From Macrostomum lignano (lineage: Eukaryota): a stretch of 64,000 nucleotides of DNA. The notes under the pieces were generated by a model. It saw only the letters and a program-made list of their open reading frames with translations, searched no databases and was not told the DNA's origin. The stretch lies in NCBI GenBank assembly GCA_002269645.1, contig NIVC01000414.1, positions 372,001-436,000 on the forward strand. The letters run 5' to 3'. A program made the translations under genes and the position numbers. Shown piece after piece: positions 13,436-64,000 of the stretch (position 1 is the first letter of the stretch; every line of letters starts with the position of its first letter).

Positions 13436-15380
13436 TGGCAGATAGAACATACAGATAGAAGATACAGATAGAACATACAGATAGAAGATACAGATAGAAC
13501 ATACAGATAGAAGATACAGATAGAACATACAGATAGAAAATACAGATAGAACATACAGATAGAACATACAGATAGAACATACAGATAGAACATACAGATA
13601 GAACATACAGATAGAAAATACAGATAGAACATACAGATAGAACATACAGATAGAACATACAGATAGAAAATACAGATAGAAAATACAGATAGAACATACA
13701 GATAGAACACCCAGATAGAACATACAGATAGAACATACAGATAGAAAATACAGATAGAAAATACAGATAGAACATACAGATAGAACATACAGATAGAACA
13801 TACAGATAGAACATACAGATAGAAAATACAAATAGAACATACAGATAGAACACCCAGATAGAACACCCAGATAGAACACACAGATAGAACATACAGATAG
13901 AACATACAGATAGAACATACAGATAGAACATACAGATAGAACATACAGATAGAACATACAGATAGAACATACAGATAGAAGATACAGATAGAACATACAG
14001 ATAGAACATACAGATAGAACATACAGATAGAACATACAGATAGAACATACAGATAAAAGATACAGATAGAAGATACAGATAGAAGATACATATAGAACAT
14101 ACAGATAGAACATACAGATAGAACATACAGATAGAACATACAGATAGAAGATACAGATAGAAGATACATATAGAACATACAGATAGAACATACAGATAGA
14201 ACATACAGATAGAAAATACAGATAGAAAATACAGATAGAACATACAGATAGAACATACAGATAGAACATACAGATAGAACATACAGATAGAACATACAGA
14301 TAGAAGATACAGATAGAAGATACAGATAGAAGATACATATAGAACATACAGATAGAACATACAGATAGAACATACAGATAGAACATACAGATAGAAGATA
14401 CAGATAGAAGATACATATAGAACATACAGATAGAACATACAGATAGAACATACAGATAGAACATACAGATAGAAGATACAGATAGAAGATACATATAGAA
14501 CATACAGATAGAACATACAGATAGAACATACAGATAGAACATACAGATAGAACATACAGATAGAAAATACAGATAGAACATACAGATAGAACACCCAGAT
14601 AGAACATACAGATAGAACATACAGATAGAACATACAGATAGAACATACAGATAGAAGATACATATAGAAAATACAGATAGAACATACAGATAGAACACCC
14701 AGATAGAACATACAGATAGAACATACAGATAGAAAATACAGATAGAAAATACAGATAGAACATACAGATAGAACACCCAGATAGAACATACAGATAGAAC
14801 ATACAGATAGAACATACAGATAGAACATACAGATAGAACATACAGAAAGAACATACGGATAGAACATACGATAGAACATACAGATAGAACATACAGATAG
14901 AACATACAGATAGAACATACAGATAGAACACACAGATAGAACATACAGATAGAACATACAGATAGAACATACAGATAGAAAATACAGATAGAACATACAG
15001 ATAGAACATACAGATAGAACATACAGATAGAAAATACAGATAGAAAATACAGATAAAACATACAGATAGAACACCCAGATAGAACATACAGATAGAACAT
15101 ACAGATAGAAAATACAGATAGAAAATACAGATAGAACATCCAGATTGAAAATACAGATAGAAAATACAGATAGAACATACAGATAGAACACCCAGATAGA
15201 ACACACAGATAGAACATACAGATAGAACATACAGATAGAACATACAGATAGAACATACAGATAGAACATACAGATAGAACATACAGATAGAACATACGAT
15301 AGAACATACAGATAGAACATACAGATAGAACACACAGATAGAACATACAGATAGAACATACAGATAGAACATACAGATAG
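13436..15380. repeat. 13-bp tandem array (GAACATACAGATA), about 150 copies
   Basis: 13-nt period; the translated ORF repeats every 13 aa (CSICMFYLYVLSV). Confidence 0.97.
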
Positions 15381-15687
15381 AGCATCTTTCGCAGAAAGGA
15401 CATGTACAATGTACATGTACTTTGCACGATTCTCATGGACTCCAGAGAGTGCACAGCGCCGAACGTCCACCAGATGCCATCGCCCACGTAGTCTGCCCGA
15501 GACAGACCTCTGCCGTCATTGCTTGCCTTCAGAGGAACTATGGAACTTCTGCTGCTCCTATTTCTGGCTGCGCCGGTGCCTTCTAAGAGCAGCACAGCCC
15601 GTTGATACATGCAAACTGTGCGCTCATTTCTGACTGCAGTATTCTGTCTGTGAGAGTTGAGACAGCACCCTGGCAGCAGAGAGCAGC

Positions 15688-21600: not shown

Positions 21601-24600
21601 CGGTTCTATTCACTGGTTTGTGTCCGGTTCTATTCACTGGTTTGTGTCCGGTTCTATTCACTGGTTTGTGTCCGGTTCTATTCACTGGTTTGTGTCCGGT
21701 TCTATTCACTGGTGTGTCGGTTCTATTCACTGGTTTGTGTCCGGTTCTATTCACTGGTTTGTGTCGGTTCTATTCACTGGTTTGTGTCGGTTCTATTCAC
21801 TGGTGTGTGTCGGTTCTATTCACTGGTTTGTGTCCGGTTCTATTCACTGGTTTGTGTCCGGTTCTATTCACTGGTGTGTCCGGTTCTATTCACTGGTTTG
21901 TGTCCGGTTCTATTCACTGGTTTGTGTCCGGTTCTATTCACTGGTGTGTGTCGGTTCTATTCACTGGTTTGTGTCCGGTTCTATTCACTGGTTTGTGTCC
22001 GGTTCTATTCACTGGTGTGTGTCCGGTTCTATTCACTGGTGTGTCCGGTTCTATTCACTGGTTTGTGTCCGGTTCTATTCACTGGTTTGTGTCCGGTTCT
22101 ATTCACTGGTTTGTGTCCGGTTCTATTCACTGGTTTGTGTCCGGTTCTATTCACTGGTGTGTGTCCGGTTCTATTCACTGGTGTGTCCGGTTCTATTCAC
22201 TGGTTTGTGTCCGGTTCTATTCACTGGTGTGTGTCCGGTTCTATTCACTGGTTGTGTCCGGTTCTATTCACTGGTTTGTGTCCGGTTCTATTCACTGGTT
22301 TGTGTCCGGTTCTATTCACTGGTTTGTGTCCGGTTCTATTCACTGGTTTGTGTCCGGTTCTATTCACTGGTTTGTGTCCGGTTCTATTCACTGGTTTGTG
22401 TCCGGTTCTATTCACTGGTGTGTCGGTTCTATTCACTGGTTTGTGTCCGGTTCTATTCACTGGTTTGTGTCCGGTTCTATTCACTGGTTTGTGTCCGGTT
22501 CTATTCACTGGTTTGTGTCCGGTTCTATTCACTGGTTTGTGTCCGGTTCTATTCACTGGTTTGTGTCCGGTTCTATTCACTGGTTTGTGTCCGGTTCTAT
22601 TCACTGGTTTGTGTCCGGTTCTATTCACTGGTTTGTGTCCGGTTCTATTCACTGGTTTGTGTCCGGTTCTATTTCACTGGTTTGTGTCCGGTTCTATTCA
22701 CTGGTTTGTGTCCGGTTCTATTCAATGGTTTGTGTCCGGTTCTATTCACTGGTTTGTGTCCGGTTCTATTCACTGGTTTGTGTCCGGTTCTATTCACTGG
22801 TTTGTGTCCGGTTCTATTCACTGGTTTGTGTCCGGTTCTATTCACTGGTTGTGTCCGGTTCTATTCACTGGTTGTGTCCGGTTCTATTCACTGGTTTGTG
22901 TCCGGTTCTATTCACTGGTTGTGTCCGGTTCTATTCACTGGTTTGTGTCCGGTTCTATTCACTGGTTTGTGTCCGGTTCTATTCACTGGTTTGTGTCCGG
23001 TTCTATTCACTGGTTTGTGTCCGGTTCTATTCACTGGTTTGTGTCCGGTTCTATTCACTGGTTTGTGTCCGGTTCTATTCACTGGTGTGTGTCCGGTTCT
23101 ATTCACTGGTTTGTGTCCGGTTCTATTCACTGGTTTGTGTCCGGTTCTATTCACTGGTTGTGTCCGGTTCTATTCACTGGTTTGTGTCCGGTTCTATTCA
23201 CTGGTTTGTGTCTGGTTCTATTCACTGGTTTGTGTCCGGTTATATTCACTGGTGTGTGTCCGGTTCTATTCACTGGTGTGTGTCCGGTTCTATTCACTGG
23301 TTTGTGTCCGGTTCTATTCACTGGTGTGTGTCCGGTTCTATTCACTGGTGTGTGTCCGGTTCTATTCACTGGTTTGTGTCCGGTTCTATTCACTGGTTTG
23401 TGTCCGGTTCTATTCACTGGTGTGTGTCCGGTTCTATTCACTGGTTTGTGTCCGGTTCTATTCACTGGTTTGTGTCCGGTTCTATTCACTGGTTTGTGTC
23501 CGGTTCTATTCACTGGTTTGTGTCCGGTTCTATTCACTGGTTTGTGTCCGGTTCTATTCACTGGTGTGTGTCGGTTCTATTCACTGGTTTGTGTCCGGTT
23601 CTATTCACTGGTTTGTGTCCGGTTATATTCACTGGTGTGTGTCCGGTTCTATTCACTGGTGTGTCCGGTTCTATTCACTGGTTTGTGTCCGGTTCTATTC
23701 ACTGGTGTGTGTCCGGTTCTATTCACTGGTTTGTGTCCGGTTCTATTCACTGGTTTGTGTCCGGTTCTATTCACTGGTGTGTGTCCGGTTCTATTCACTG
23801 GTTTGTGTCCGGTTCTATTCACTGGTGTGTGTCCGGTTCTATTCACTGGTTGTGTCCGGTTCTATTCACTGGTGTGTGTCCGGTTCTATTCACTGGTTTG
23901 TGTCCGGTTCTATTCACTGGTTTGTGTCCGGTTCTATTCACTGGTTTGTGTCCGGTTCTATTCACTGGTTTGTGTCCGGTTATATTCACTGGTGTGTGTC
24001 CGGTTCTATTCACTGGTGTGTGTCCGGTTCTATTCACTGGTTTGTGTCCGGTTATATTCACTGGTGTGTGTCCGGTTCTATTCACTGGTGTGTGTCCGGT
24101 TCTATTCACTGGTTTGTGTCCGGTTCTATTCACTGGTTTGTGTCCGGTTCTATTCACTGGTTTGTGTCCGGTTCTATTCACTGGTTTGTGTCCGGTTCTA
24201 TTCACTGGTGTGTGTCCGGTTCTATTCACTGGTTTGTGTCCGGTTCTATTCACTGGTGTGTCCGGTTCTATTCACTGGTTGTGTCCGGTTCTATTCACTG
24301 GTTTGTGTCTGGTTCTATTCACTGGTTTGTGTCCGGTTATATTCACTGTGTTGTCGGTTCTATTCACTGGTGTGTGTCCGGTTCTATTCACTGGTTTGTG
24401 TCCGGTTCTATTCACTGGTTTGTGTCCGGTTCTATTCACTGGTGTGTCCGGTTCTATTCACTGGTTTGTGTCCGGTTCTATTCACTGGTTTGTGTCCGGT
24501 TCTATTCACTGGTTTGTGTCCGGTTCTATTCACTGGTTTGTGTCCGGTTCTATTCACTGGTTTGTGTCCGGTTCTATTCACTGGTTGTGTCGGTTCTATT

Positions 24601-27600
24601 CACTGGTTTGTGTCCGGTTCTATTATTCACTGGTTTGTGTCCGGTTCTATTCACTGGTTTGTGTCCGGTTCTATTTCACTGGTTTGTGTCCGGTTCTATT
24701 CACTGGTTTGTGTCCGGTTCTATTCACTGGTTTGTGTCCGGTTCTATTCACTGGTTTGTGTCCGGTTCTATTATTCACTGGTTTGTGTCCGGTTCTATTC
24801 ACTGGTTTGTGTCCGGTTCTATTATTCACTGGTTTGTGTCCGGTTCTATTCACTGGTTTGTGTCCGGTTCTATTCACTGGTTTGTGTCCGGTTCTATTCA
24901 CTGGTTTGTGTCCGGTTCTATTCACTGGTTTGTGTCCGGTTCTATTCACTGGTGTGTGTCCGGTTCTATTCACTGGTTTGTGTCCGGTTCTATTCACTGG
25001 TTTGTGTCCGGTTCTATTCACTGGTGTGTGTCCGGTTCTATTCACTGGTTTGTGTCCGGTTCTATTCACTGGTTTGTGTCTGGTTCTATTCACTGGTTTG
25101 TGTCCGGTTATATTCACTGGTGTGTGTCCGGTTCTATTCACTGGTGTGTGTCCGGTTCTATTCACTGGTTTGTGTCCGGTTATTCACTGGTTTGTGTCCG
25201 GTTCTATTCACTGGTTTGTGTCCGGTTCTATTCACTGGTTTGTGTCCGATTCCATTCACTGGTTTGTGTCCGGTTCTATTCACTGGTGTGTCCGGTTCTA
25301 TTCACTGGTTGTGTCCGGTTCTATTCACTGGTTTGTGTCCGGTTCTATTCACTGGTTTGTGTCCGGTTCTATTCACTGGTTTGTGTCCGGTTCTATTCAC
25401 TGGTTTGTGTCCGGTTCTATTCACTGGTTTGTGTCCGGTTCTATTCACTGGTTTGTGTCCGGTTCTATTCACTGGTTTGTGTCCGGTTCTATTCACTGGT
25501 TTGTGTCCGGTTCTATTCACTGGTTTGTGTCCGGTTCTATTCACTGGTTTGTGTCCGGTTCTATTCACTGGTTTGTGTCCGGTTCTATTCACTGGTTTGT
25601 GTCCGGTTCTATTCACTGGTTTGTGTCCGGTTCTATTCACTGGTTTGTGTCCGGTTCTATTCACTGGTGTGTGTCCGGTTCTATTCACTGGTTTGTGTCC
25701 GGTTCTATTCACTGGTTTGTGTCCGGTTCTATTCACTGGTGTGTGTCCGGTTCTATTCACTGGTTTGTGTCCGGTTCTATTCACTGGTTTGTGTCGGTTC
25801 TATTCACTGGTTTGTGTCCGGTTCTATTCACTGGTGTGTGTCCGGTTCTATTCACTGGTTGTGTCCGGTTCTATTCACTGGTTTGTGTCCGGTTCTATTC
25901 ACTGGTGTGTGTCCGGTTCTATTCACTGGTTTGTGTCCGGTTCTATTCACTGGTTTGTGTCGGTTCTATTCACTGGTTTGTGTCCGGTTCTATTCACTGG
26001 TGTGTGTCCGGTTCTATTCACTGGTGTGTGTCCGGTTCTATTCACTGGTTTGTGTCCGGTTCTATTCACTGGTTTGTGTCCGGTTCTATTCACTGGTTGT
26101 GTCCGGTTCTATTCACTGGTTTGTGTCCGGTTCTATTCACTGGTTTGTGTCCGGTTCTATTCACTGGTTTGTGTCTGGTTCTATTCACTGGTTTGTGTCC
26201 GGTTCTATTCACTGGTTTGTGTCCGGTTCTATTCACTGGTTTGTGTCCGGTTCTATTCACTGGTTTGTGTCCGGTTCTATTCACTGGTTTGTGTCCGGTT
26301 CTATTCACTGGTTGTGTCCGGTTCTATTCACTGGTTTGTGTCCGGTTCTATTCACTGGTTTGTGTCCGGTTCTATTCACTGGTGTGTGTCCGGTTCTATT
26401 CACTGGTTGTGTCCGGTTCTATTCACTGGTTTGTGTCCGGTTCTATTCACTGGTGTGTGTCCGGTTCTATTCACTGGTTTGTGTCCGGTTCTATTCACTG
26501 GTTTGTGTCCGGTTCTATTCACTGGTGTGTGTCCGGTTCTATTCACTGGTTTGTGTCCGGTTCTATTCACTGGTTTGTGTCCGGTTCTATTCACTGGTGT
26601 GTGTCCGGTTCTATTCACTGGTTTGTGTCCGGTTCTATTCACTGGTTTGTGTCCGGTTCTATTCACTGGTTTGTGTCCGGTTCTATTCACTGGTGTGTGT
26701 CCGGTTCTATTCACTGGTTTGTGTCCGGTTCTATTCACTGGTTGTGTCCGGTTCTATTCACTGGTTGTGTCCGGTTCTATTCACTGGTGTGTGTCCGGTT
26801 CTATTCACTGGTGTGTGTCCGGTTCTATTCACTGGTGTGTCCGGTTCTATTCACTGGTGTGTCCGGTTCTATTCACTGGTTTGTGTCCGGTTCTATTCAC
26901 TGGTTTGTGTCCGGTTCTATTCACTGGTTGTGTCCGGTTCTATTCACTGGTGTGTGTCCGGTTCTATTCACTGGTTTGTGTCCGGTTCTATTCACTGGTT
27001 TGTGTCCGGTTCTATTCACTGGTTGTGTCCGGTTCTATTCACTGGTTTGTGTCCGGTTCTATTCACTGGTTTGTGTCCGGTTCTATTCACTGGTTTGTGT
27101 CCGGTTCTATTCACTGGTTGTGTCCGGTTCTATTCACTGGTTTGTGTCCGGTTCTATTCACTGGTTTGTGTCCGGTTCTATTCACTGGTTTGTGTCCGGT
27201 TCTATTCACTGGTTTGTGTCCGGTTCTATTCACTGGTTTGTGTCCGGTTCTATTCACTGGTTTGTGTCCGGTTCTATTCACTGGTTTGTGTCCGGTTCTA
27301 TTCACTGGTTTGTGTCCGGTTCTATTCACTGGTTTGTGTCCGGTTCTATTCACTGGTTTGTGTCCGGTTCTATTCACTGGTTTGTGTCCGGTTCTATTAT
27401 TCACTGGTTTGTGTCCGGTTCTATTACTGGTTTGTGTCCGGTTCTATTCACTGGTTTGTGTCCGGTTCTATTCACTGGTTTGTGTCCGGTTCTATTATTC
27501 ACTGGTTTGTGTCCGGTTCTATTCACTGGTTTGTGTCCGGTTCTATTCACTGGTTTGTGTCCGGTTCTATTCACTGGTTTGTGTCCGGTTCTATTCACTG

Positions 27601-30600
27601 GTTTGTGTCCGGTTCTATTCACTGGTTTGTGTCCGGTTCTATTCACTGGTTTGTGTCCGGTTCTATTCACTGGTTTGTGTCCGGTTCTATTCACTGGTGT
27701 GTGTCCGGTTCTATTCACTGGTTTGTGTCCGGTTCTATTCACTGGTTTGTGTCCGGTTCTATTCACTGGTGTGTGTCCGGTTCTATTCACTGGTTTGTGT
27801 CCGGTTCTATTCACTGGTTTGTGTCTGGTTCTATTCACTGGTTTGTGTCCGGTTATATTCACTGGTGTGTGTCGGTTCTATTCACTGGTGTGTGTCCGGT
27901 TCTATTCACTGGTTTGTGTCCGGTTCTATTCACTGGTTTGTGTCCGGTTCTATTCACTGGTTGTGTCCGGTTCTATTCACTGGTTTGTGTCCGGTTCTAT
28001 TCACTGGTTTGTGTCCGGTTCTATTCACTGGTTTGTGTCCGGTTCTATTCACTGGTGTGTGTCCGGTTCTATTCACTGGTTTGTGTCCGGTTCTATTCAC
28101 TGGTTTGTGTCCGGTTCTATTCACTGGTGTGTGTCCGGTTCTATTCACTGGTTTGTGTCCGGTTCTATTCACTGGTTTGTGTCCGGTTCTATTCACTGGT
28201 TTGTGTCCGGTTCTATTCACTGGTTTGTGTCCGGTTCTATTCACTGGTTTGTGTCCGGTTCTATTCACTGGTTTGTGTCCGGTTCTATTCACTGGTTTGT
28301 GTCCGGTTCTATTCACTGGTTTGTGTCCGGTTCTATTCACTGGTTTGTGTCCGGTTCTATTCACTGGTTTGTGTCCGGTTCTATTCACTGGTTTGTGTCC
28401 GGTTCTATTCACTGGTGTGTGTCGGTTCTATTCACTGGTTTGTGTCCGGTTCTATTCACTGGTTTGTGTCCGGTTCTATTCACTGGTGTGTGTCCGGTTC
28501 TATTCACTGGTTTGTGTCCGGTTCCATTCACTGGTTTGTGTCCGGTTCTATTCACTGGTGTGTCCGGTTCTATTCACTGGTTTGTGTCCGGTTCTATTCA
28601 CTGGTTTGTGTCCGGTTCTATTCACTGGTGTGTGTCCGGTTCTATTCACTGGTTTGTGTCCGGTTCTATTCACTGGTTTGTGTCCGGTTCTATTCACTGG
28701 TTTGTGTCCGGTTCTATTCACTGGTTTGTGTCCGGTTCTATTCACTGGTTTGTGTCCGGTTCTATTCACTGGTTTGTGTCCGGTTCTATTCACTGGTGTG
28801 TGTCCGGTTCTATTCACTGGTTTGTGTCCGGTTCTATTCACTGGTTTGTGTCCGGTTCTATTCACTGGTGTGTCCGGTTCTATTCACTGGTTTGTGTCCG
28901 GTTCTATTCACTGGTTTGTGTCCGGTTCTATTCACTGGTGTGTGTCCGGTTCTATTCACTGGTTTTGTCCGGTTCTATTCACTGGTTTGTGTCCGGTTCT
29001 ATTCACTGGTTTGTGTCCGGTTCTATTCACTGGTTTGTGTCCGGTTCTATTCACTGGTTTGTGTCCGGTTCTATTCACTGGTTTGTGTCCGGTTCTATTC
29101 ACTGGTTTGTGTCCGGTTCTATTCACTGGTTTGTGTCCGGTTCTATTCACTGGTTTGTGTCCGGTTCTATTCACTGGTTTGTGTCTGGTTCTATTCACTG
29201 GTTTGTGTCCGGTTCTATTCACTGGTGTGTGTCGGGTTCTATTCACTGGTTTGTGTCCGGTTCTATTCACTGGTTTGTGTCCGGTTCTATTCACTGGTTT
29301 GTGTCCGGTTCTATTCACTGGTTTGTGTCCGGTTCTAAACACTGGTTTGTGTCTGGTTCTATTCACTGGTTTGTGTCCGGTTATATTCACTGGTGTGTGT
29401 CGGGTTCTATTCACTGGTGTGTGTCCGGTTCTATTCACTGGTTTGTGTCCGGTTCTATTCACTGGTTTGTGTCCGGTTCTATTCACTGGTTTGTGTCCGG
29501 TTCTATTCACTGGTTTGTGTCCGGTTCTATTCACTGGTTTGTGTCCGGTTCTATTCACTGGTTTGTGTCCGGTTCTATTCACTGGTTGTGTCCGGTTCTA
29601 TTCACTGGTTTGTGTCCGGTTCTATTCACTGGTTTGTGTCCGGTTCTATTCACTGGTGTGTGTCTGGTTCTATTCACTGGTTTGTGTCCGGTTCTATTCA
29701 CTGGTTTGTGTCCGGTTCTATTCACTGGTTTGTGTCCGGTTCTATTCACTGGTTTGTGTCCGGTTCTATTCACTGGTGTGTGTCCGGTTCTATTCACTGG
29801 TTTGTGTCCGGTTCTATTCACTGGTTTGTGTCCGGTTCTATTCACTGGTTTGTGTCCGGTTCTATTCACTGGTGTGTGTCGGTTCTATTCACTGGTTTGT
29901 GTCCGGTTCTATTCACTGGTTTGTGTCCGGTTCTATTCACTGGTTTGTGTCCGGTTCTATTCACTGGTTTGTGTCCGGTTCTATTCACTGGTTTGTGTCC
30001 GGTTCTATTCACTGGTTTGTGTCCGGTTCTATTCACTGGTTTGTGTCCGGTTCTATTCACTGGTTTGTGTCCGGTTCTATTCACTGGTTGTGTCCGGTTC
30101 TATTCACTGGTTTGTGTCCGGTTCTATTCACTGGTTTGTGTCCGGTTCTATTCACTGGTTGTGTCCGGTTCTATTCACTGGTTTGTGTCCGGTTCTATTC
30201 ACTGGTTTGTGTCCGGTTCTATTCACTGGTTTGTGTCCGGTTCTATTCACTGGTTTGTGTCCGGTTCTATTCACTGGTTTGTGTCCGGTTCTATTCACTG
30301 GTGTGTGTCCGGTTCTATTCACTGGTTTGTGTCCGGTTCTATTCACTGGTTTGTGTCCGGTTCTATTCACTGGTTTGTGTCCGGTTCTATTCACTGGTTT
30401 GTGTCCGGTTCTATTCACTGGTTTGTGTCCGGTTCTATTCACTGGTTTGTGTCCGGTTCTATTCACTGGTTTGTGTCCGGTTCTATTCACTGGTTTGTGT
30501 CCGGTTCTATTCACTGGTTTGTGTCCGGTTCTATTCACTGGTTTGTGTCCGGTTCTATTCACTGGTTTGTGTCCGGTTCTATTCACTGGTTGTGTCCGGT

Positions 30601-32724
30601 TCTATTCACTGGTGTGTGTCGGTTCTATTCACTGGTTTGTGTCCGGTTCTATTCACTGGTTTGTGTCCGGTTCTATTCACTGGTTTGTGTCCGGTTCTAT
30701 TCACTGGTTTGTGTCCGGTTCTATTCACTGGTTTGTGTCCGGTTCTATTCACTGGTTTGTGTCCGGTTCTATTCACTGGTTTGTGTCCGGTTCTATTCAC
30801 TGGTGTGTGTCCGGTTCTATTCACTGGTTTGTGTCCGGTTCTATTCACTGGTTTGTGTCCGGTTCTATTCACTGGTTTGTGTCCGGTTCTATTCACTGGT
30901 GTGTGTCGGTTCTATTCACTGGTTTGTGTCCGGTTCTATTCACTGGTTTGTGTCCGGTTCTATTCACTGGTTGTGTCCGGTTCTATTCACTGGTTTGTGT
31001 CCGGTTCTATTCACTGGTTTGTGTCCGGTTCTATTCACTGGTTTGTGTCCGGTTCTATTCACTGGTTTGTGTCGGTTCTATTCACTGGTTTGTGTCCGGT
31101 TCTATTCACTGGTTTGTGTCCGGTTCTATTCACTGGTTTGTGTCCGGTTCTATTCACTGGTTTGTGTCCGGTTCTATTCACTGGTTTGTGTCCGGTTCTA
31201 TTCACTGGTTTGTGTCCGGTTCTATTCACTGGTTTGTGTCGGTTCTATTCACTGGTGTGTGTCGGTTCTATTCACTGGTTTGTGTCCGGTTCTATTCACT
31301 GGTTTGTGTCCGGTTCTATTCACTGGTGTTGTGTCCGGTTCTATTCACTGGTTTGTGTCCGGTTCTATTCACTGGTTTGTGTCCGGTTCTATTCACTGGT
31401 TTGTGTCCGGTTCTATTCACTGGTGTGTGTCCGGTTCTATTCACTGGTTTGTGTCCGGTTCTATTCACTGGTTTGTGTCCGGTTCTATTCACTGGTTTGT
31501 GTCCGGTTCTATTCACTGGTTTGTGTCCGGTTCTATTCACTGGTTTGTGTCGGTTCTATTCACTGGTGTGTGTCCGGTTCTATTCACTGGTTTGTGTCCG
31601 GTTCTATTCACTGGTTTGTGTCCGGTTCTATTCACTGGTTTGTGTCCGGTTCTATTCACTGGTTTGTGTCCGGTTATATTCACTGGTGTGTGTCGGGTTC
31701 TATTCACTGGTTTGTGTCCGGTTCTATTCACTGGTTTGTGTCCGGTTCTATTCACTGGTGTGTGTCCGGTTCTATTCACTGGTTTGTGTCCGGTTCTATT
31801 CACTGGTTTGTGTCCGGTTCTATTCACTGGTGTGTGTCGGTTCTATTCACTGGTTTGTGTCCGGTTCTATTCACTGGTTTGTGTCCGGTTCTATTCACTG
31901 GTGTGTGTCTGGTTCTATTCACTGGTTTGTGTCCGGTTCTATTCACTGGTTTGTGTCCGGTTCTATTCACTGGTTTGTGTCTGGTTCTATTCACTGGTTT
32001 GTGTCGGTTATATTCACTGGTGTGTGTCGGTTCTATTCACTGGTTTGTGTCCGGTTCTATTCACTGGTTTGTGTCCGGTTCTATTCACTGGTGTGTGTCC
32101 GGTTCTATTCACTGGTTTGTGTCCGATTCTATTCACTGGTTTGTGTCCGGTTCTATTCACTGGTTTGTGTCCGGTTCTATTCACTGGTTTGTGTCCGGTT
32201 CTATTCACTGGTTTGTGTCCGGTTCTATTCACTGGTGTGTGTCCGGTTCTATTCACTGGTTTGTGTCCGGTTCTATTCACTGGTTTGTGTCCGGTTCTAT
32301 TCACTGGTTTGTGTCCGGTTCTATTCACTGGTGTGTGTCCGGTTCTATTCACTGGTGTGTGTCCGGTTCTGTTCACTGGTTTGTGTCCGGTTATATTCAC
32401 TGGTGTGTGTCGGGTTCTATTCACTGGTTTGTGTCCGGTTCTATTCACTGGTTTGTGTCCGGTTCTATTCACTGGTGTGTGTCCGGTTCTATTATTCACT
32501 GGTTTGTGTCCGGTTCTATTATTCACTGGTTTGTGTCCGGTTCTATTATTCACTGGTTTGTGTCCGGTTCTATTATTCACTGGTTTTTGTCCGGTTCTAT
32601 TCACTGGTTTGTGTCCGGTTCTATTATTCACTGGTTTGTGTCCGGTTCTATTATTCACTGGTTTGTGTCCGGTTCTATTATTCACTGGTTTGTGTCCGGT
32701 TCTATTATTCACTGGTTTGTGTCC
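15688..32724. repeat. 24-bp satellite array (TCCGGTTCTATTCACTGGTTTGTG), about 700 copies, 17 kb
   Basis: 24-nt period with recurrent variants (GGTG/GGTT, TATATT, AAAC, 27-bp TATTATT). Confidence 0.99.
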
Positions 32725-54917: not shown

Positions 54918-55937
54918 TCATTTCCTTGCACTAAAAAACGAGCTGAAGAATCCAGGCTGCAGCTTCCTGCCCGTCAGGAACTCGTGCTCCAGCAGCTCAT
55001 GCGCGGATCTTCTCCTCCTGCGGTCCTTGGCGGTGCAGCGGCTGTAAAAATCCCTCAGCTCTGCGGACCGGCCGTCCGGCAGGGCGGGGACGCCCTTCCT
55101 GTCGATCAGCTGGGCCATTTCTAACAGGCTTTTGGCGTTCGCGAACGGCCTCACGCCGGACGCCATCTGAAAGACCGAGCAGCCGAACGCCCAGATGTCC
55201 GACTCTCTGCTGTACTGCAAGCTGTCTGACTCTCCCGCTCCGAGCAGCTCCGGCGCCATGAAGTTCAGAGTGCCTTTGGGTGACGGAGTGGAGGCTGAGA
55301 TGTGGCTGACTGACTGCTCCAGCTTGATTGACAGGCCGAAGTCGATCAGCTTGATTTGCGTGTTGTCAGCACAAACAATTATGTTCGAGCAGTTGATGTC
55401 TCTGTGGATAACGAGCGGCTGCCGGCTGTGCAGGTAGAGCAGCGCGCGGCAGATCTGCGAGCGGTCGGTCAGTGAGCAGTCATCATTCATGGGAACATGG
55501 AACAGGAGCATCAAGGATGCACAATGCTCACCTGCTCGCTGAAGTCTCGAATCTTTGGCTCGTCCAGCGGCTTGTTGTCGATAAACCTCTCCAAGCTTCG
55601 GCCGTCCAGCAGCTCCATGAACACAACGACTGCGGCGGGCTCCGGCTGAGCGATGTGCAAGAACCTGACGATGTTGGGATGCCGCAGTCGGCACAGGTTT
55701 CTCTCGCTCTCGACAGCTCTGTGAATCTCTGTGCTCACAGAGGTTTGGTCATCACCGAGCTGCACAGGCAGTCTGAGAGTCTTGGCAGCGCACGTGACGC
55801 CCGTGTCAGTTCGAACTTCGTGGACCTCGCCGAAGCCTCCGCGGCGGATGAGGCGAAGGGCATCCCAGCGCTCCAGGAACGGGGGACCTTCGGGTCTGAG
55901 GGGATGCGGATTCAGGCAATGAGGGATAATTTGCATG
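54918..55937 (-). CDS. MEKK/STE11-like protein kinase domain, two exons with a 77-bp intron at 55455-55531
   Basis: GGFGEV, AAK, E..L.RLRHPNIVRF, FMEL, HRDINCSN, KLIDFG, GTLNFMAPE, SDIWAFGC, LLEHEFL. The intron has CAG|GTGAGC and CGCAG|ATC. Confidence 0.93.
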
Positions 55938-58900
55938 CTGTAGCTGTGTGTGCTGTAGTTGTAGCTGCTGTAGCTGTGTGTGCTGTAGCTGTGTGCTGTA
56001 GCTGTGTGTGCTGTAGCTGTGTGCTGTAGCTGTGTGCTGTAGCTGTGTGCTGTAGCTGTGTGCTGTAGCTGTGTGCTGTAGCTGTGTGCTGTAGCTGTAT
56101 GCTGTAGCTGTCTGCTGTAGTCTTTTTAACAGTACAGTAATTATTTTGTGTGCTGAAGGAACTCACGGCAGTGCCAGAGGCTCGTAGAAGTAAATCTTGC
56201 CGTCGTACCTAAATAGGCAGAGCGGAGTCTGAGGTCAGAGGGAATTCAGTTGAGAGCCACGTAGAATACAAAAAGCTTCAAAAAAATTACCCAAATTTAC
56301 TCAAACAAGTGTATTGTCTCACAGCTCGCATTAAAATTCAACTGGCAATCTGCAGTCAAACTGCACTGCAAACTCCCTCAATGCAGCTCAGTCAGTGTCT
56401 GCTGCCCATTTAAACTACAAAAATGTAAAAATGCCCACTCAGAGCAACTGCAGTCAGCTGCTCAATATTCAATCATAAATTACAGCATAATGTTTATCAA
56501 TGATAAATCAAAGTCAGAGAGACATTCCCAGTCGCCATGGAAACTCACCCACGCAGCAGCTCAGCCAGTTCGCTCTTTCCTTTCTGTGTGGCCAAATCCA
56601 GCGCAGTCCTGCCGTCTCTGTCCTTCAGGCTCCAATCCGCCCCTGAGTCCAGCAGAACCCGGCCGACTGCGGCGGCGGCGGAGGGGCGCGCACAGATGGC
56701 TGCCGACATGAGAAGCGTGAATTCCCACATACTAGTGGCATTGGCGGAGGCTCCGGCAGACAGCAGAGCGGAGGCTGCGGCAGAATTGCCAGCCCTGGCT
56801 GCCCGGAGCAGGATACTGTCAGCATCTACATCCGCACAGGTGGGGTCACCCAACTGCACCAGCTGCTCCCACAGAGCTTCATCACCGCACGAGCTGTTCT
56901 CAGCAGCCCACATCAACGCGGTGCAACCATCATTGTCAGGCAGGTCGCAGCTGTCGCGGGTCGCCGCTCGCCGCAGCCCCGCCAAGTCGCCCGCTTTGGC
57001 CAGCCGCTGCAGTTCCAGTCGTTCCGCCTCCTCCTGCAAAGGCGAGCGGGAAATTTGAGCACAGCTGCTCAGCTGCAGCCGCATCGGCACCGCAGATGCC
57101 GCTCACCTGGGCTGTCAGGCCGGAGATCTCGCCATCTGCATCCACAACCAGCCGCATCTCCCTGCAACAGGAAAAATGAGCTGCGAATTTGACATTTTCA
57201 AAAATCCGACATCTTCGACTGCTAAAACTAAATTCCTAGTTCTACGATAAAGTTTGCATGACAAATTTAGTGAACAGAAATTTCCCAATTATCTGAGCTG
57301 CTCGCAGCTGGAGTTTCCAAGAGGACTGCAGCAGCTCTGCAACAATCAGCATCGGCGAGAGCGCATCCGACTTCTCACACGCAGCTCATTTTCCATTTCT
57401 GCAGCATGAGTTTCCTTCCATCTCATAATGTCTCACAAAGCACTCACGCACAGCCTCCCAGTTCTCCATCAGCAGCTCAACCCACACACTCTCACTGCAC
57501 ACAGAGGCCCTACAGCTTCCATTCTCGACTGAGATCAACCGGCACCCCATTGGCTGGGAGGCAGCCAGCCAATCACAGCTCTCGCCCATCAAACAGTCAG
57601 ACAGAGACAAGCTCAGCTGACTGGCTCTGATTGGCTGGCCTGAGACTGCAGCTCTGGCCACCACAGCCGAATGTTGCAAAACTTGATGGACACAGCAGCG
57701 AACTGCTCACTCACCGCTCGATGTAGCTGGCCAGCTCTGAGTGGCCGCTGAGCCTCGCCAGGTCCGACGCCGTCCGACCCTCGAGATCTTTCTTTTTGAG
57801 CAGCCGCGACCTCTTCGAGTTTCCGTGCTGTCTGCACTCATTGAACATTGCTTGCCTGAGCAGGTGCAGCAGGTGCTTGGCGCATTTCCAGCTTCCAGTC
57901 CGCGCCGCCTCCATCAGCGGAGTGGCGCCGTTGTCGTTCCGCAGCCACTTCGCATCGAACGACAGCAGCGCCAGCAGCCGCAGGTGGTCCCGCCGGGCTG
58001 CCAGGTGCGCAGCCGTGTCGCCGTTCGCGTCAGCCGCCTTGGGGTTCGCGCCCAGCTCAAATAAGTACAAGATGCACTTTTCAGACTTGACGGGAGTCTC
58101 AGGAGCGTCGGCCGCCAGCATGAGGACGGTTCGACGAGCTGCATCAGCGCTGGTGACCAGCTGGCGCGTTGCCAGCCGTTGCACCTTGCCGAAGTCACCT
58201 CGGATGACGTCGTGGACGAGAGTCTGGAGACTAACCGATTCGTTTAGAAAGTAGCTGTAGCTGTGTGTGCTGTAGCTGTGTGCTGTAGCTGTGTGCTGTA
58301 GCTGTGTGCTGTAGCTGTGTGTCCTGTAGCTGTGTGCTGTAGCTGTGTGTCCTGTAGCTGTGTGTGCTGTAGCTGTGTGTTGTAGCTGTGTATGCTGTAG
58401 CTGTGTATGCTGTAGCTGTGTGCTGTAGCTGTGTGCTGTAGCTGTGTGTGCTGTAGCTGTGTGTGCTGTAGCTGTGTGTGCTGTAGCTGTGTGCTGTAGC
58501 TGTGTGTGCTGTAGCTGTGTGCTGTAGCTGTGTGCTGTAGCTGTGTGTGCTGCAGCTGTGTGTGCTGTAGCTGTGTGCTTTAGCTGTGTGCTGTAGCTGT
58601 GTGTGCTGTAGCTGTGTGCTGTAGCTGTGTGCTGTAGCTGTGTGTGCTGTAGCTGTGTGCTGTAGCTGTGTGCTGTAGCTGTGTGCTGTAGCTGTGTGTG
58701 CTGTAGCTGTGTGTGCTGTAGCCGTGTGCTGTAGCTGTGTGTCCTGTAGCTGTGTGCTGTAGCTGTGTGTCCTGTAGCTGTGTGTTGTAGCTGTGTATGC
58801 TGTAGCTGTGTATGCTGTAGCTGTGTGCTGTAGCTGTGTGCTGTAGCTGTGTGTGCTGTAGCTGTGTGTGCTGTAGCTGTGTGCTGTAGCTGTGTGTGCT

Positions 58901-61900
58901 GTAGCTGTGTGCTGTAGCTGTGTGCTGTAGCTGTGTGTGCTGCAGCTGTGTGTGCTGTAGCTGTGTGCTGTAGCTGTGTGCTGTAGCTGTGTGTGCTGTA
59001 GCTGTGTGCTGTAGCTGTGTGCTGTAGCTGTGTGCTGTAGCTGTGTGTGCTGTAGCTGTGTGTGCTGTAGCCGTGTGCTGTAGCTGTGTGTGCTGTAGCT
59101 GTGTGTGCTGTAGCTGTGTGCTGTAGCTGTGTGTGCTGTAGCTGTGTGTGCTGTAGCTGTGTGTGCTGTAGCTGTGTGCTGTAGCTGTGTGTGCTGTAGC
59201 TGTGTGCTGTAGCTGTGTGCTGTAGCTGTGTGTGCTGCAGCTGTGTGTGCTGTAGCTGTGTGCTGTAGCTGTGTGCTGTAGCTGTGTGTGCTGTAGCTGT
59301 GTGCTGTAGCTGTGTGCTGTAGCTGTGTGTGCTGTAGCTGTGTGCTGTAGCTGTGTGCTGTAGCTGTGTGTGCTGTAGCTGTGTGTGCTGTAGCCGTGTG
59401 CTGTAGCTGTGTGTGCTGTAGCTGTGTGTGCTGTAGCTGTGTGCTGTAGCTGTGTGTGCTGTAGCTGTGTGCTGTAGCTGTGTGCTGTAGCTGTGTGTGC
59501 TGTAGCTGTGTGTGCTGTAGCTGTGTGTGCTGTAGCTGTGTGTGCTGTAGCAAACTCACAGAGGATCCTGGAAGTAGCTGTCTCCTTCAAATCTGAAACA
59601 TGTAAACTGTATTATTTTAGAACTTTGGTCTTCTATAAAAAACAGTTTACTATTAAAAGTTAACGTAATCCTTACTTGAACAATTAATTATAAAATTTTT
59701 GTCGCTCGTAATATGTATTTTAATTAGTTGCTCTAATTAATCTTAAATAAACTGACATTCTCAGTCGCCATGGAAACTCACCCACGCAGCAGCTCAGCCA
59801 GTTCGCTCCTCTTCTCTGTGGCCAAACGCAGCGCAGTCTTGCTGAATTTGTCCTCCAGGCTCCAATCCGCCCCTGAGTCCAGCAGAACCCGACCGACTGC
59901 GGCGGCGGTGGCGGGGGGCGCAAAGGCTGCATGCATGAGGGGCGTGAATTCACACAGACCCCTGGCATTGGCGGAGGCTCCGGCAGACAGCAGAGCGGAG
60001 GCTGCGGCAGAATTGCCAGCCCTGGCTGCCCACTGCAGGTAACTGATACCCCATATATTCGCACAGGTGGGGTCACCCAGCTGCACCAGCTGCTCCCAAA
60101 GAGCCTCATCACCGCACGATCTGTTTCCAGCTGCCAACATCAACGCGGTGACACCCAAACTGTAAGGCAGGTCGCAGTTGCCGCGGGTCGCCGCTCGCCG
60201 CAGCCCTGCCGAGTCGTTCGCTTTGGCCAGCCGCTGCAGTTCCAGTCGTTCCGCCTCCTCCTGCAAAGGCAAGCGGGAAATTTGAGCACAGCTGCTCAGC
60301 TGCAGCCGCATCGGCACCGCAGATGCCGCTCACCTGGGCTGTCAGGCCGGAGATCTCGCCATCTGCATCCACAACCAGCCGCATCTCCCTGCAACAGGAA
60401 AAATGAGCTGCGAATTTGACATTTTCTCAAATTCTACAACCTCAATCGCTAAATCATAATCTTAAGTTGTAGGATTTAATTTTCATGAAAAATTTAGTGA
60501 ACAGAAATTCCTAATTATCTGAGCTGCTGGCAGATGGAGTTTCCAAGAGGACTGCAGCAGCTCTGCAACAATCAGCATCGGCGAGAGCGCATCCGACTTC
60601 TCACACGCAGCTCATTTTTCATTTCTGTAACATGAGTTTCCTTCCATCTCACAATGTCACACAAAGCACTCACGCACAGCCTCCCAGTTCTCCATCTGCA
60701 GCTCAACCCACACACTCTCACTGCACACCGAGGCCCTACAGCTTCCATTCTCGACTGAGATCAACCGGCACCCCATTGGCTGGAAGGCAGCCAGCCAATC
60801 ACGGCTCTCGCCCATCAAACAGTCAGACAGAGACAAGCTCAGCTGACTGGCTCTGATTGGCTGGCCTGAGACTGCACCTCGAGCTCGAGGACACCGTCAA
60901 AAATTCTGATTCGCTCTCGCTTTCGGTCGACCCACAGATAAAGTCAAGGACTCGCGGAAGTAGCGATTCACCGAAGCCAAACCTCGAAGCCTACGAGGAG
61001 CCGCTACCGTCAGAGATATTTGACCCGAGGATATACTTGGTCCCCAGTGTCTAGAAGTGAGAGTTTTTGAGTGACTAATCACCACTCTTAAATTTTTCAC
61101 ATTCACTCAGCCAGAGACAAGCTCAGCTGACTGGCTCTGATTGGCTGGCCTGAGAGTGCAGCTCTGGCCACCCCAGCCGAATGCTGCAAAACTTGATGGA
61201 CACAGCAGCGAACTGCTCACTCACCGCTCGATGTAGCTGGCCAGCTCTGAGTGGCCGCTGAGCCTCGCCAGGTCCGACGCCATCCGACCCTCGCGATCCT
61301 CCAGTCCGAGCAGCCGCGACCTCTTCGAGTTTCCGTGCTGTCTGCACTCATTGAACATTGCTTGCCTGAGCAGGTGCAGCAGGTGCTTGGCGCATTTCCA
61401 GCTTCCAGTCCGCGCCGCCTCCATCAGCGGAGTGGCGCCGTTGTCGTTCCGCAGCCACTTCGCATCGAACGACAGCAGCGTCAGCAGCCGCAGGTGGTCC
61501 CGCCGGGCTGCCAGGTGCGCAGCCGTGTCGCCGTTCGCGTCAGCCGCCTTGGGGTTCGCGCCCACCTCAAATAAGTACAAGATGCACTTTTCAGACTTGA
61601 CGGGAGTCTCAGGAGCGTCGGCCACCAGCATGAGGACGGTCCGACGAGCTGCATCAGCGCTGGAGACCAGCTGGCGCGTTGCCAGCCGCCGAACCTGGCT
61701 GAAGTCACCTCGGATGACGTCGTGGGCGAGAGTCTGGAGATCGGCTGGTGAGTCTCCGACGCTTGCTCGGTTGGTGGGGTCCGGCTGAGTGAGTTCCTGC
61801 AACTGCAATTGAGGCACCCAAGCTGCACATTCAAACATGTGAGTGAGTTCCTGCAACTGCAATTGAGGCACCCAAGCTGCTCATTCAAACACGTGAGTGA

Positions 61901-62271
61901 GTTCCTGCAACTGCAATTGAGGCACCCAAGCTGCACATTCAAACATGTGAGTTCCTGCCACTGCAATTGAGGCACCCAAGCTGCACATTCAAACATGTGA
62001 GTGAGTTCCTGCCACTGCAATTGAGGCACCCAAGCTGCACATTCAAACATATGAGAGAGTTCCTGCCACTGCAATTGAGGCACCCAAGCTGCACATTCAA
62101 ACATGTGAGTGAGTTCCTGCAACTGCAATTGAGGCACCCAAGCTGCACATTCAAACATGTGAGTTCCTGCAGCTGCAATTGAGCCTATAGATTTTAATAT
62201 GGTTTCGGTTTTCTCACTTGAACTTTACTTACTCTTTCGTCAGGAAATGGTGATTTCCCTCGCTGTGCCAT
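54918..62271 (-). CDS. Ankyrin-repeat / Ser-Thr kinase gene with doubled ANK module (about 1080 aa). Exons: 62233-62271, 61225-61796, 60334-60388, 59782-60260, 59560-59592, 57715-58254, 57107-57161, 56549-57033, 56167-56208, 55532-55937, 54918-55454
   Basis: Every junction is GT..AG and phase-compatible. Exon lengths sum to 3243 nt (1081 codons including the stop) with no internal stop. About 16 ANK repeats followed by a kinase domain. Confidence 0.78.
55938..56115. repeat. (TGTGCTGTAGC)n repeat in the linker-to-kinase intron
   Basis: Same unit as 5100-5286; its last CAG serves as the kinase exon acceptor. Confidence 0.92.
58255..59550. repeat. 1.3-kb (TGTGCTGTAGC)n repeat in the linker-to-second-ANK-A intron
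   Basis: Same unit, much expanded. Confidence 0.95.
60877..61111. other. 235-bp insertion flanked by 49-bp direct repeats (60828-60876 and 61112-61160)
   Basis: Absent from the three paralogous introns; begins with the perfect palindrome CCTCGAGCTCGAGG. Confidence 0.8.
61787..62180. repeat. 54/50-bp tandem repeat containing the exon A splice acceptor, about 7 copies
   Basis: Same unit as 37930-38215. Confidence 0.9.
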
Positions 62272-63611: not shown

Positions 63612-64000
63612 TCACCGCTCCATCCTCTTTCGGTGCCTGAGCACAGTCTCAGACACGGTGATGGAGTGCAGACGCCCCGAGTCCCAACACTGCAGCTTCC
63701 TGGCGGTGTCCCTGCCGATGCCAAACAACAGCATCTCGGTGTCGTCCAGCATGTTGACAATTGAGCAGTGCTCATTGAGCGGCGAGTGCAGAGCTCGGTC
63801 CATGATGGCGCAGACTCTTCCCCTGAGCAGCTTGCACAGGGTGTGGGCGATGTCAGGCCTTGATGCCCCCGGCAGCAGCAGCAGGTGCATGCCCTGCAGG
63901 TACAGCTGAGGTGACAGCTGGCGCAGGTTCACCACGGTGGGGTCAGCGCTGAAGATGTTCTTCTGCGCCTCCGTCAGGCAGCGCGGGGGCTCCACGCGGA
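63612..64000 (-). CDS. GINS3: GINS complex subunit Psf3, 3' part (5' end outside the window)
   Basis: VEPPRCL...NIFSADPTVVNLRQLSP..Y..G..LL...DIA..L.....GR...IMD....LDD.E..LF..G.....QCWDSG....IT.S..V..HRKR resembles, from memory, vertebrate GINS3 (SVELPKIY..VFSADPNVVDLHKMGP..FIGRFRRIMD..FQCWEKG). Confidence 0.85.
   Translation of the reverse strand, partial: RVEPPRCLTEAQKNIFSADPTVVNLRQLSPQLYLQGMHLLLLPGASRPDIAHTLCKLLRGRVCAIMDRALHSPLNEHCSIVNMLDDTEMLLFGIGRDTARKLQCWDSGRLHSITVSETVLRHRKRMER

What the first reader, a model, noticed from the sequence alone, without database searches (positions are those of the whole stretch)
54918..62271. In-frame doubling of the whole sensor cassette ahead of the kinase
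Seen: a 33-nt linker exon (FEGDSYFQDPL) and the 1.3-kb repeat intron lead into a chimeric exon. Its first 25 or so nt (CTACTTTCTAAACGAATCGGTTAG) are foreign to exon A and are fused at LQTL to a second A exon, converting a phase-0 exon into a symmetric phase 2-2 exon of 540 nt. The result is A-B-linker-A'-B'-linker-kinase in one frame, with two B exons of different variable-site type. Inference: a duplication breakpoint created a two-specificity receptor.
Basis: partly seen in the sequence, partly recalled or inferred. Interest (0 to 1): 0.75.

Follow-up and report, generated by a model that had tools for sequence, protein, structure and literature searches.

The report
Two ankyrin sensor units fused before kinase
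In the flatworm Macrostomum lignano, two neighbouring copies of a fast-evolving ankyrin-repeat gene have been joined so that both could be read in one frame ahead of a single kinase, but the public RNA-guided gene model uses only one mixed unit, so the "double sensor" protein is possible and unproven.

Summary
The window is identical to Macrostomum lignano contig NIVC01000414.1. On the minus strand, 11 exons with canonical AG/GT sites (62271-54918) splice into one open frame of 1,068 aa: tail, ANK(A-m-B), linker 1, ANK(A'-m2-B'), linker 2, STE-like kinase.

- Origin: B and B' are not sister copies. B groups with two kinase-less neighbours, and B' groups with paralogues on other contigs. Linker 1 belongs to a separate 33-nt linker type that other loci splice to their own kinase. 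A deletion starting in the unstable (CACACAGCTACAG)n intron, fusing two adjacent paralogues, fits better than an in-place duplication.
- Expression: the GenBank gene spans exactly these coordinates, but its 699-aa product is E1-A-m-B'-lk2-kinase. It skips B, lk1, A' and m2. An older annotation splits the locus into two models. No database protein found here carries both units.
- Specificity: B and B' differ at 22 of 30 family-hypervariable ANK surface positions against 15 of 129 framework positions, so "two variable-site types" holds.
- "Receptor" is conjecture.

This is a young, single-locus fusion in a birth-and-death gene family. Junction-spanning RNA reads or long-read cDNA would settle what is made.

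The parts
62233..62271 (-). Exon E1 with the start codon (MAQRGKSPFPDER), phase 0
   Evidence: It is identical to the N-terminus of GenBank product P0002.
61803..62232 (-). Intron 1. It holds about 7.5 tandem 54-nt units, each repeating the acceptor plus the first 17 nt of exon A.
61225..61802 (-). Exon A (copy c1), the first half of ANK unit 1. The acceptor at 61802 is the one used in P0002 (LQELTQ...). An alternative AG lies at 61784.
60334..60388 (-). Exon m (55 nt), identical in nucleotides to m2
59782..60260 (-). Exon B (c1), the hypervariable half of ANK unit 1. Its closest relatives are c3 (36700-36219) and c0.
   Evidence: It is present in UniRef/MetaClust protein P0169.
59560..59592 (-). 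Linker exon lk1 (33 nt, FEGDSYFQDPL), of the 'lk1 type'. If its donor is not used, the frame reads CT|G TGA and stops at once.
   Evidence: Homologous exons occur in L003 431-463 and L005 12282-12314.
58255..59559 (-). Intron made of the (CACACAGCTACAG)n microsatellite, 1,305 nt. It has no AATAAA or ATTAAA and is the proposed site of the deletion that fused the two genes.
   Evidence: The same array follows the linker exon in c0, c2, c4, L003 and L005.
58231..58254 (-). The 24-nt junction piece CTACTTTCTAAACGAATCGGTTAG, with no relative found. It is either the first 8 codons of A' (YFLNESVS) or the intron tail, with a CTAAAC branch-point-like motif and a TAG acceptor.
57715..58230 (-). Exon A' (c2), homologous to exon A from LQTL onward. 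Only the part of A that encodes the predicted disordered N-terminal tail is missing.
   Evidence: In the AF2 model residues 1-30 and 385-402 have pLDDT below 50, and the helix 404-413 starts at LQTL.
57107..57161 (-). Exon m2
56549..57033 (-). Exon B' (c2), the hypervariable half of ANK unit 2. This is the B exon used in GenBank product P0002.
56167..56208 (-). Linker exon lk2 (42 nt, YDGKIYFYEPLALP), the common 'lk2 type'
55532..55895 (-). Kinase exon K1
54918..55454 (-). Kinase exon K2 with the stop codon. An AATAAA lies at 54759.

Best explanation
The locus belongs to a Macrostomum-specific, tandemly arrayed gene family. A two-exon-block ankyrin-repeat unit (A-m-B) is joined through a short linker exon to an effector, which is an STE-like kinase, a caspase, or nothing.

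At this locus two adjacent paralogues appear to have been fused. The upstream one was of the 'lk1' linker type and the downstream one of the 'lk2' type. I infer a deletion that began in the unstable (CACACAGCTACAG)n intron after lk1. It removed the upstream gene's kinase, the spacer, and the downstream gene's first exon, first intron and the first ~66 nt of exon A.

The breakpoint falls at the edge between the disordered N-terminal tail and the first ANK helix. All exon phases still match. The unit can therefore encode a 1,060-1,068-aa protein: two complete ANK solenoids with different hypervariable surfaces, a flexible linker of about 20 aa, and one catalytically competent-looking kinase.

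Shown: the anatomy, the open frame, the family relationships, the annotated single-cassette isoform.
Inferred: deletion as the mechanism, use of the lk1-to-A' splice, and any sensing function.
For: - The window is identical to NIVC01000414.1, and the annotated gene spans exactly 62271-54918.
- All 11 exons have AG/GT sites and give one open frame.
- B clusters with c3 and c0, while B' clusters with cassettes on other contigs.
- Identity along the unit is mosaic. The B-to-linker intron of c1 is unlike that of c2, c3 and c4.
- The lk1-type exon with the same donor and array occurs in L005. There it is followed by intact K1 and K2, and the RNA-guided model P0125 splices it across 631 nt of array.
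- In L003 an lk1-type gene lies about 9 kb upstream of an lk2-type kinase gene, in the same order as here. Its array runs straight into the last ~30 nt of K2.
- c0 and c3 are also kinase-deleted and keep a K2 3' remnant. Array-associated kinase loss is therefore recurrent.
- There is no polyA signal between lk1 and A'.
- AF2 predicts two separate folded ANK blocks with a disordered junction at 385-402.
- Pkinase scores 162.9 bits, and the AAK lysine, HRD, DFG and APE motifs are present.
- RNA-guided or MAKER models elsewhere in the family also concatenate modules. P0001 has ANK plus two kinases over a locus with three tandem K1K2 copies, and P0015 has ANK, kinase and caspase.
Against: - The only RNA-guided product for this locus (P0002) has one cassette, A of c1 plus B' of c2.
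- The older annotation splits the locus in two.
- No protein holding both cassettes turned up in the three searches.
- Both candidate A' acceptors are weaker than the other acceptors of the gene.
- A and A' are each other's nearest A exons (0.036) and share a 173-nt identical run. This could reflect duplication rather than gene conversion.
- No locus with conserved flanks was found that would show the undeleted ancestral state.
- dN/dS of about 1-2 across the cassettes cannot by itself separate diversifying selection from relaxed constraint.
Confidence: 0.5

Rival explanations
1. In-place tandem duplication. The segment from mid-exon A to the linker intron was duplicated, and the 24 nt are filler at the duplication junction. 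B, lk1 and the intron before lk1 later diverged or were overwritten by gene conversion.
For: - A and A' are nearest neighbours (0.036) and share a 173-nt identical run. m and m2 are identical.
- The structure is exactly what a tandem duplication of [x..y] gives.
- Module-level tandem duplication does occur in the family. L004 has three K1K2 copies at a 1,306-nt period.
Against: - B and B' differ by 13% and sit in different clades.
- lk1 (33 nt) and lk2 (42 nt), with about 150 nt of upstream intron each, belong to two lineages that each recur at other loci.
- c1 A is almost as close to L003 A (0.038) as to A'.
- The nearby c0 and c3 have only a degenerate lk1, so they could not have donated the intact lk1 exon by conversion.
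Confidence: 0.2
2. One transcription unit, but only single-cassette proteins are made. Exons B, lk1, A' and m2 (or another in-frame subset) are skipped, as in the GenBank product. The doubled frame is an unused by-product. A variant of this rival: P0002 comes from a segregating allele in which recombination between the identical m and m2 regions deleted the inner exons.
For: - P0002 is identical to the m-to-B' (or A-to-m2) isoform.
- The annotation is RNA-seq guided.
- Every skip tested is in frame: m to B', lk1 to K1, lk1 to m2, and B to lk2.
- The A' acceptors are weak.
Against: - Skipping four consecutive exons that have strong sites (B, m2) would be unusual.
- The mature mRNA paths share a 154-nt identical stretch (A 3' end, m, B 5' end) and a 173-nt run in A. 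A short-read assembler would collapse a truly doubled transcript into exactly P0002. P0002 therefore does not discriminate.
- The supposedly skipped exons are all intact.
Confidence: 0.25
3. Two products, not one. The upstream unit makes an ANK-only protein ending ...ELLRG* or ...FQDPL* through intron retention or early polyadenylation. The downstream 5'-truncated unit is either dead or expressed separately, by read-through plus spliced-leader trans-splicing, from the internal Met (MLAADAPE).
For: - The ML2-type models do exactly this. P0169 ends at ELLRG after B of c1, and P0004 starts at the Met inside A'.
- Many ANK-only family members are annotated. These include P0121, P0125 and P0127, the 412-aa gene in L003 that ends at the TGA in the lk1-type donor, and c0 and c3.
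- An ATTAAA lies in the B-lk1 intron at 59724.
- M. lignano trans-splices about 30% of its genes (PMC8629364).
Against: - The GenBank model links E1 and A of c1 to B' and the kinase of c2, with no cut at a trans-splice or polyA site.
- A cis donor (lk1) lies upstream of the A' acceptor, which favours cis-splicing (principle cited in PMC8629364).
- The ATG at the end of the spliced leader is out of frame at both acceptors and meets early stops (my reading).
- A product starting at MLAADAPE would lack the first three helices of the ANK domain.
- 1.3 kb of microsatellite is an unlikely promoter.
Confidence: 0.2
4. Assembly artefact. Two haplotypes or paralogues were wrongly joined in tandem at the long microsatellite.
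For: Mlig_3_7 is a redundant assembly of a polyploid line with 15% simple and tandem repeats (PMC5730564). The join lies at a 1.3-kb array.
Against: - A mis-join would not create a unique 24-nt piece followed by an exon cut cleanly at a domain edge.
- The older ML2-based model P0004 starts at the first Met after the same truncation, which fits the same truncated A' being present there.
- P0169 carries c1's exact A-m-B.
- The GenBank gene spans the join.
Confidence: 0.06

Closest known systems
[quoted passage not shown] 2014)
   Same: The same kind of N-terminal ankyrin block ahead of an effector. Paralogues with the same A-m-B unit and the same linker exon carry a caspase, for example c4 in this window (8503-4088) and P0016. 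That paper also notes an M. lignano caspase with a kinase-like pro-domain, which is probably P0015.
   Different: Here the effector is a protein kinase, not a caspase. The unit occurs twice. The shared, hypervariable, tandemly arrayed ANK unit with swapped effectors was not mentioned in the passages I read.
Ankyrin-repeat kinases of other animals (ILK, TNNI3K: ANK then kinase; RIPK4/ANKK1, DAPK1: kinase then ANK). From my own knowledge, not tested.
   Same: ANK repeats and a kinase domain in one cytosolic polypeptide.
   Different: The kinase here is closest to STE-group kinases: ASK1/MAP3K5, MAP3K2 and PAK, E about 1e-27. No orthology to those families was seen. The ANK block is lineage-specific and hypervariable.
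Fusion genes formed between tandem paralogues by deletion or unequal exchange (textbook cases: haemoglobin Lepore, CYP11B1/B2 hybrids, opsin hybrids). From my own knowledge.
   Same: Two neighbouring paralogues in the same orientation joined into one transcription unit, with loss of the DNA between them.
   Different: Those cases arise by homologous exchange and give a single hybrid copy. Here the join is non-homologous (array to mid-exon, with 24 nt of unknown origin) and concatenates two complete binding units.
Repeat-domain immune or cell-death sensors with hypervariable binding surfaces (fungal NLR-like proteins with ANK/TPR/WD repeats, plant NLRs, designed ankyrin repeat proteins). From my own knowledge, as an analogy only.
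   Same: A conserved repeat framework with variation concentrated at hairpin and helix-1 surface positions. dN/dS is at or above 1. There is birth-and-death turnover in tandem arrays, and a kinase or caspase as effector.
   Different: There is no NACHT/NB-ARC module, and no evidence of ligand, infection response or oligomerisation. The function is untested.

Membership tests
Protein kinase superfamily (Pfam PF00069) | Kinase domain above the curated score | tested here: met
   162.9 bits against a cut-off of 31.7, residues 777-1044. Best solved relatives are MAP3K5, MAP3K2 and PAK1.
Protein kinase superfamily (Pfam PF00069) | Catalytic motifs: VAIK lysine, HRD, DFG, APE | tested here: met
   CAAK, IHRDINCSN, IDFG and MAPE are present. 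The glycine loop reads RRGGFGEV where paralogues have GRGGFGEV.
Ankyrin-repeat proteins | Multiple ANK repeats above the curated score, folding as helix-hairpin stacks | tested here: met
   Ank_2 scores 150.3 bits in 7 stretches. The AF2 model shows two helical-repeat blocks, at about 32-384 and 404-754.
Platyhelminth ANK-caspase family | Caspase p20/p10 domain after the ANK pro-domain | tested here: not met
   This gene has no caspase match. Caspase exons follow only copy c4. The gene is a paralogue that shares the pro-domain, not an ANK-caspase.
In-place tandem exon-block duplication | The two copies are each other's closest relatives over the whole duplicated block | tested here: not met
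   Met weakly for A (0.036, against 0.038 to L003). Not met for B (0.13, with nearer relatives elsewhere) or for the linker and its intron.
Fusion of adjacent paralogues by deletion | Each half groups with a different pre-existing lineage, and an unfused arrangement of the same two lineages exists | tested here: inconclusive
   The halves group differently. L003 shows an lk1-type gene upstream of an lk2-type kinase gene. No locus with matching flanks was found.
Spliced-leader operon (two genes in one precursor RNA) | PolyA site of the upstream gene followed by an SL acceptor of the downstream gene | not testable with these tools
   No AATAAA or ATTAAA between lk1 and A'. SL and 3'-end read tracks are not available here. 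The GenBank model is not cut at this point.
Doubled ANK-ANK-kinase protein (the claim itself) | An mRNA or protein that contains the lk1-A' junction | tested here: not met
   No protein with both cassettes was returned by three searches of the 5.8-billion-protein set. P0002, P0004 and P0169 each hold one cassette. The search is not exhaustive: it also failed to return the 754-aa neighbour product. Absence from annotations is not absence from the cell.

The most novel reading that the evidence does not exclude
The fused locus works as a small combinatorial sensor cassette array. Every exon boundary is phase compatible. Splicing could therefore attach unit 1, unit 2, both units, or a mixed A(c1)+B'(c2) unit to the same kinase. 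The mixed form is the one in GenBank. One gene would then yield several recognition surfaces in a candidate flatworm immune or cell-death sensor family.
Probability: 0.12. Interest if true: 0.65.

Novelty: new variant of a known kind. Interest (0 to 1): 0.35.

Why it matters
If the doubled mRNA is made, this would be a caught-in-the-act example of a new two-headed binding protein arising from neighbouring paralogues in an animal. The break sits neatly at a domain edge.

More broadly, the family pairs one hypervariable ANK unit with a kinase, a caspase or nothing, in unstable tandem arrays. That looks like a lineage-specific sensor-effector system in a regeneration model organism and deserves functional study.

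If only single-cassette products are made, the locus is instead a useful warning. Internally repeated genes are collapsed or split by short-read annotation.

Tried and rejected
- I searched for the 24-nt junction piece in the window (up to 3 mismatches) and in the related loci fetched. There was no relative, so its origin is unknown and it is not the start of the caspase or kinase exons seen here.
- I looked for a locus with the same flanks that would show the unfused state. Only family exons matched.
- I tried to recover the 754-aa product of the upstream neighbour c0, which may be another doubled unit. The third homologue search did not return it, and the contig beyond L001 could not be fetched.
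- I searched paper text and supplements for Mlig015152 and found nothing.
- I considered that c2 and c4 share the same exon-A truncation. I rejected this: c4 (and its twin L008) is cut about 6-10 nt away by a 4.4-kb insertion with unrelated sequence, and L007 is cut elsewhere.
- I considered that lk1 marks only dead, kinase-less genes. I rejected this because L005 has lk1 followed by an intact kinase.
- I considered in-frame use of the spliced leader's ATG at A'. It is out of frame at both acceptors.
Full report
**What the window is.** The top protein matches are all from Macrostomum lignano. The reverse complement of the window is base-for-base identical to GenBank contig NIVC01000414.1 of assembly Mlig_3_7 over the 19,083 bases that overlap locus L001.

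**Checking the observation.**
- On the minus strand I placed 11 exons, each flanked by AG and GT(G/A)AG.
  - E1 62271-62233
  - A 61802 (or 61784)-61225
  - m 60388-60334
  - B 60260-59782
  - lk1 59592-59560
  - A' 58254-57715
  - m2 57161-57107
  - B' 57033-56549
  - lk2 56208-56167
  - K1 55895-55532
  - K2 54918-55454
- Spliced together they give one open frame of 1,062 aa, or 1,068 aa with the A acceptor used in GenBank.
- lk1 is 33 nt and encodes FEGDSYFQDPL.
- The next intron is 1,305 nt of (CACACAGCTACAG)n.
- A' is 540 nt and enters and leaves in phase 2.
- Homology to exon A begins exactly at 58230, at LQTL. The 24 nt before it have no relative in the window or in the other loci fetched.
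- Pfam finds ANK repeats throughout residues ~30-755 and a protein kinase at 777-1044.
- The observation therefore stands.
- Two qualifications apply.
  - Being in frame is about a 1-in-3 event.
- A second AG (TAG, 58232-58231) lies exactly at the homology boundary. It is also in frame, so the 24 nt may be intron tail rather than coding.

**The family.** The window holds four A-m-B units, all on the minus strand.
- c1 lies at 61.8-59.8 kb.
- c2 lies at 58.2-56.5 kb.
- c3 lies at 38.0-36.2 kb.
- c4 lies at 8.5-5.8 kb.
- A fifth unit, c0, lies just beyond position 64000.
- c2 is followed by a kinase and c4 by caspase exons (5353-4088).
- c0 and c3 end in a 13-nt terminal exon (..FLQ*), followed by the last ~50 nt of a kinase exon. 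Their kinase has been deleted.
- Dozens of M. lignano proteins share the unit, as ANK-kinase, ANK-caspase, ANK-only and one ANK-kinase-caspase.
- The kinase is nearest to STE-group kinases (MAP3K5, MAP3K2, PAK) and keeps the catalytic motifs.

**Variable sites.**
- Across 21 other family members, sequence entropy is concentrated at a few positions per ANK repeat. These are the hairpin tip, the residue after T-x-L-M, and the residues after AA.
- B and B' differ at 22 of 30 such positions, against 15 of 129 framework positions (p = 4e-11).
- Pairwise dN/dS in A and B is 1.0-2.1.
That these surfaces bind different ligands is inference.

**Origin: fusion rather than doubling.**
- Identity along the unit is mosaic.
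- In a neighbour-joining tree of B exons, c1 groups with c3 (0.04) and c0. B' is 0.13 from B and groups with cassettes on other contigs.
- lk1 is not a diverged copy of lk2. It is one of two linker types, each found at several loci.
  - The 33-nt lk1 type has its own AT-rich upstream intron and the donor CT|GTGAGTT running into the array (c1, L003, L005).
  - The 42-nt lk2 type occurs in c0, c2, c4, L002, L003, L004 and L006.
- In L005 the lk1-type exon is followed by 631 nt of intron, mostly the same array, and then an intact K1-K2. The RNA-guided model P0125 splices from that donor to an AG 8 nt inside K1. The lk1 donor is therefore a working donor in a paralogue.
- In L003 an lk1-type gene lies about 9 kb upstream of an lk2-type kinase gene. 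Its array runs directly into the last ~30 nt of K2, and the annotated 412-aa product stops at the TGA inside the unused donor.
- Kinase loss that starts in or next to this array has thus happened at least three times: c0/c3, L003, and here.
- The simplest account for c1-c2 is a deletion running from the array of an upstream lk1-type gene into exon A of the next gene.
- The 173-nt identical run between A and A', and the identical m exons, look like later gene conversion.
- I could not find the unfused ancestral arrangement with matching flanks, so this remains an inference. I put fusion at about 0.65 and in-place duplication at about 0.2-0.25.

**Where the break falls.**
- An AlphaFold2 model of the 1,068-aa product has mean pLDDT 71.5. 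The second ANK block scores 88-97.
- Residues 1-30 and 385-402 are predicted disordered. Helices start at residue 32 and at residue 404, the latter at LQTL.
- A' has therefore lost only the floppy N-terminal tail. The second unit is structurally complete and would be tethered by about 20 flexible residues.

**Is the doubled protein made?** This is unresolved.
- The GenBank product P0002 is identical, residue for residue, to E1-A(c1)-m-B'(c2)-lk2-K1-K2. It skips B, lk1, A' and m2.
- That annotation is RNA-seq guided: StringTie and TACO, BLAT-mapped Trinity contigs, and boundaries cut at spliced-leader and polyA evidence (PMC5730564). It supports one transcription unit from E1 to the kinase stop, but it does not support the doubled product.
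- The two paths through the mRNA share a 154-nt identical stretch around m and a 173-nt run in A. A short-read assembler would collapse a genuinely doubled transcript into exactly P0002, or wrongly join two separate transcripts. P0002 therefore cannot discriminate.
- P0002 could also come from an allele in which recombination between m and m2 removed the inner exons.
- The older annotation splits the locus.
  - P0169 fuses an upstream unrelated gene to c1's A-m-B and stops at ELLRG*.
  - P0004 starts at the first Met inside A'.
- Points in favour of inclusion:
  - All inner exons are intact, and B and m2 have strong splice sites.
  - No polyA signal lies between lk1 and A'.
  - A cis donor precedes the A' acceptor.
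  - The family has other concatenated models, such as P0001 with two kinases over a locus with three tandem K1K2 copies.
- Points against: the A' acceptors are the weakest in the gene.
- Every alternative skip I tested is in frame.
- My estimates:
  - a doubled mRNA as a substantial isoform, about 0.4
  - single-cassette isoforms only, about 0.25
  - two separate products, about 0.2
  - assembly artefact, about 0.06

**Comparison with known systems and novelty.**
- The locus works like a fusion gene formed between tandem paralogues. It lies inside a family related to the published flatworm ANK-caspases.
- It is not itself an ANK-caspase, because it has no caspase domain.
- It also fails the simple test for an in-place duplication, because the copies are not sisters over B and the linker.
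- The resemblance to repeat-based immune sensors is an analogy only.
- I rate it a new variant of a known kind. It is moderately interesting as a young domain-concatenating fusion. The family as a whole is more interesting than the doubling alone.

Noticed in passing
window 15689-32724 and 13439-15385: A 17-kb satellite of about 710 copies of the 24-nt unit TCTATTCACTGGTTTGTGTCCGGT, with extreme AT skew (-0.68). Next to it is a 1.9-kb array of a 13-nt unit, CAGATAGAACATA. They separate c3 from c4.
   Followed up: no
window 62183-61786 and 38218-37929: Intron 1 of c1 and of c3 holds 5-8 tandem 54-nt units. Each repeats the acceptor CAATTGCAG plus the first 17 nt of exon A, which gives a row of decoy acceptors ahead of the real one.
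   Followed up: partly
window 38341-35820: Copy c3 is an ANK-only gene: E1-A-m-B, then the terminal exon ATTTTTACAATAA (..GFLQ*), followed by a remnant of the kinase 3' end (..SAQQLLKHEFLTGIF*). The same deleted 3' end is seen in c0 (L001 2921-3000), so the two are duplicates.
   Followed up: partly
window 13146-4088: Copy c4 is an ANK-caspase gene. Its exon A is split by a ~4.4-kb insertion: the 5' piece is at 13030-12957 and the rest starts at ~8497. B has a partial internal duplication (6042-5563). A near-identical twin lies on another contig (L008).
   Followed up: partly
window 49677-49378: An isolated fragment of kinase exon K2 (54% aa identity to this gene's K2, up to 96% nt identity to other paralogues over ~160 nt), about 5 kb downstream of the gene, with no other family exons nearby.
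   Followed up: no
L001 1-2934 (contig beyond window position 64000): The upstream neighbour c0 is annotated with a 754-aa ANK-only product. The part I could see accounts for only 362 aa. The missing ~390 aa equals one more A-m-B-linker unit, so a second doubled unit may sit next door.
   Followed up: partly
L004 20116-23647: One ANK unit is followed by three tandem K1-K2 kinase copies at a 1,306-nt period. The GenBank product P0001 (985 aa) carries two kinase domains in frame.
   Followed up: no
window 63998-63627 and beyond: Exons of an unrelated gene with no Pfam match lie just upstream of E1. The same gene also precedes a family member in L007, so it belongs to the duplicated segment. One annotation (P0169) fuses it to c1.
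   Followed up: partly
window 55850-55830 (K1): The glycine-rich loop of this kinase reads RRGGFGEV, where paralogues have GRGGFGEV. The first glycine is replaced by arginine.
   Followed up: no
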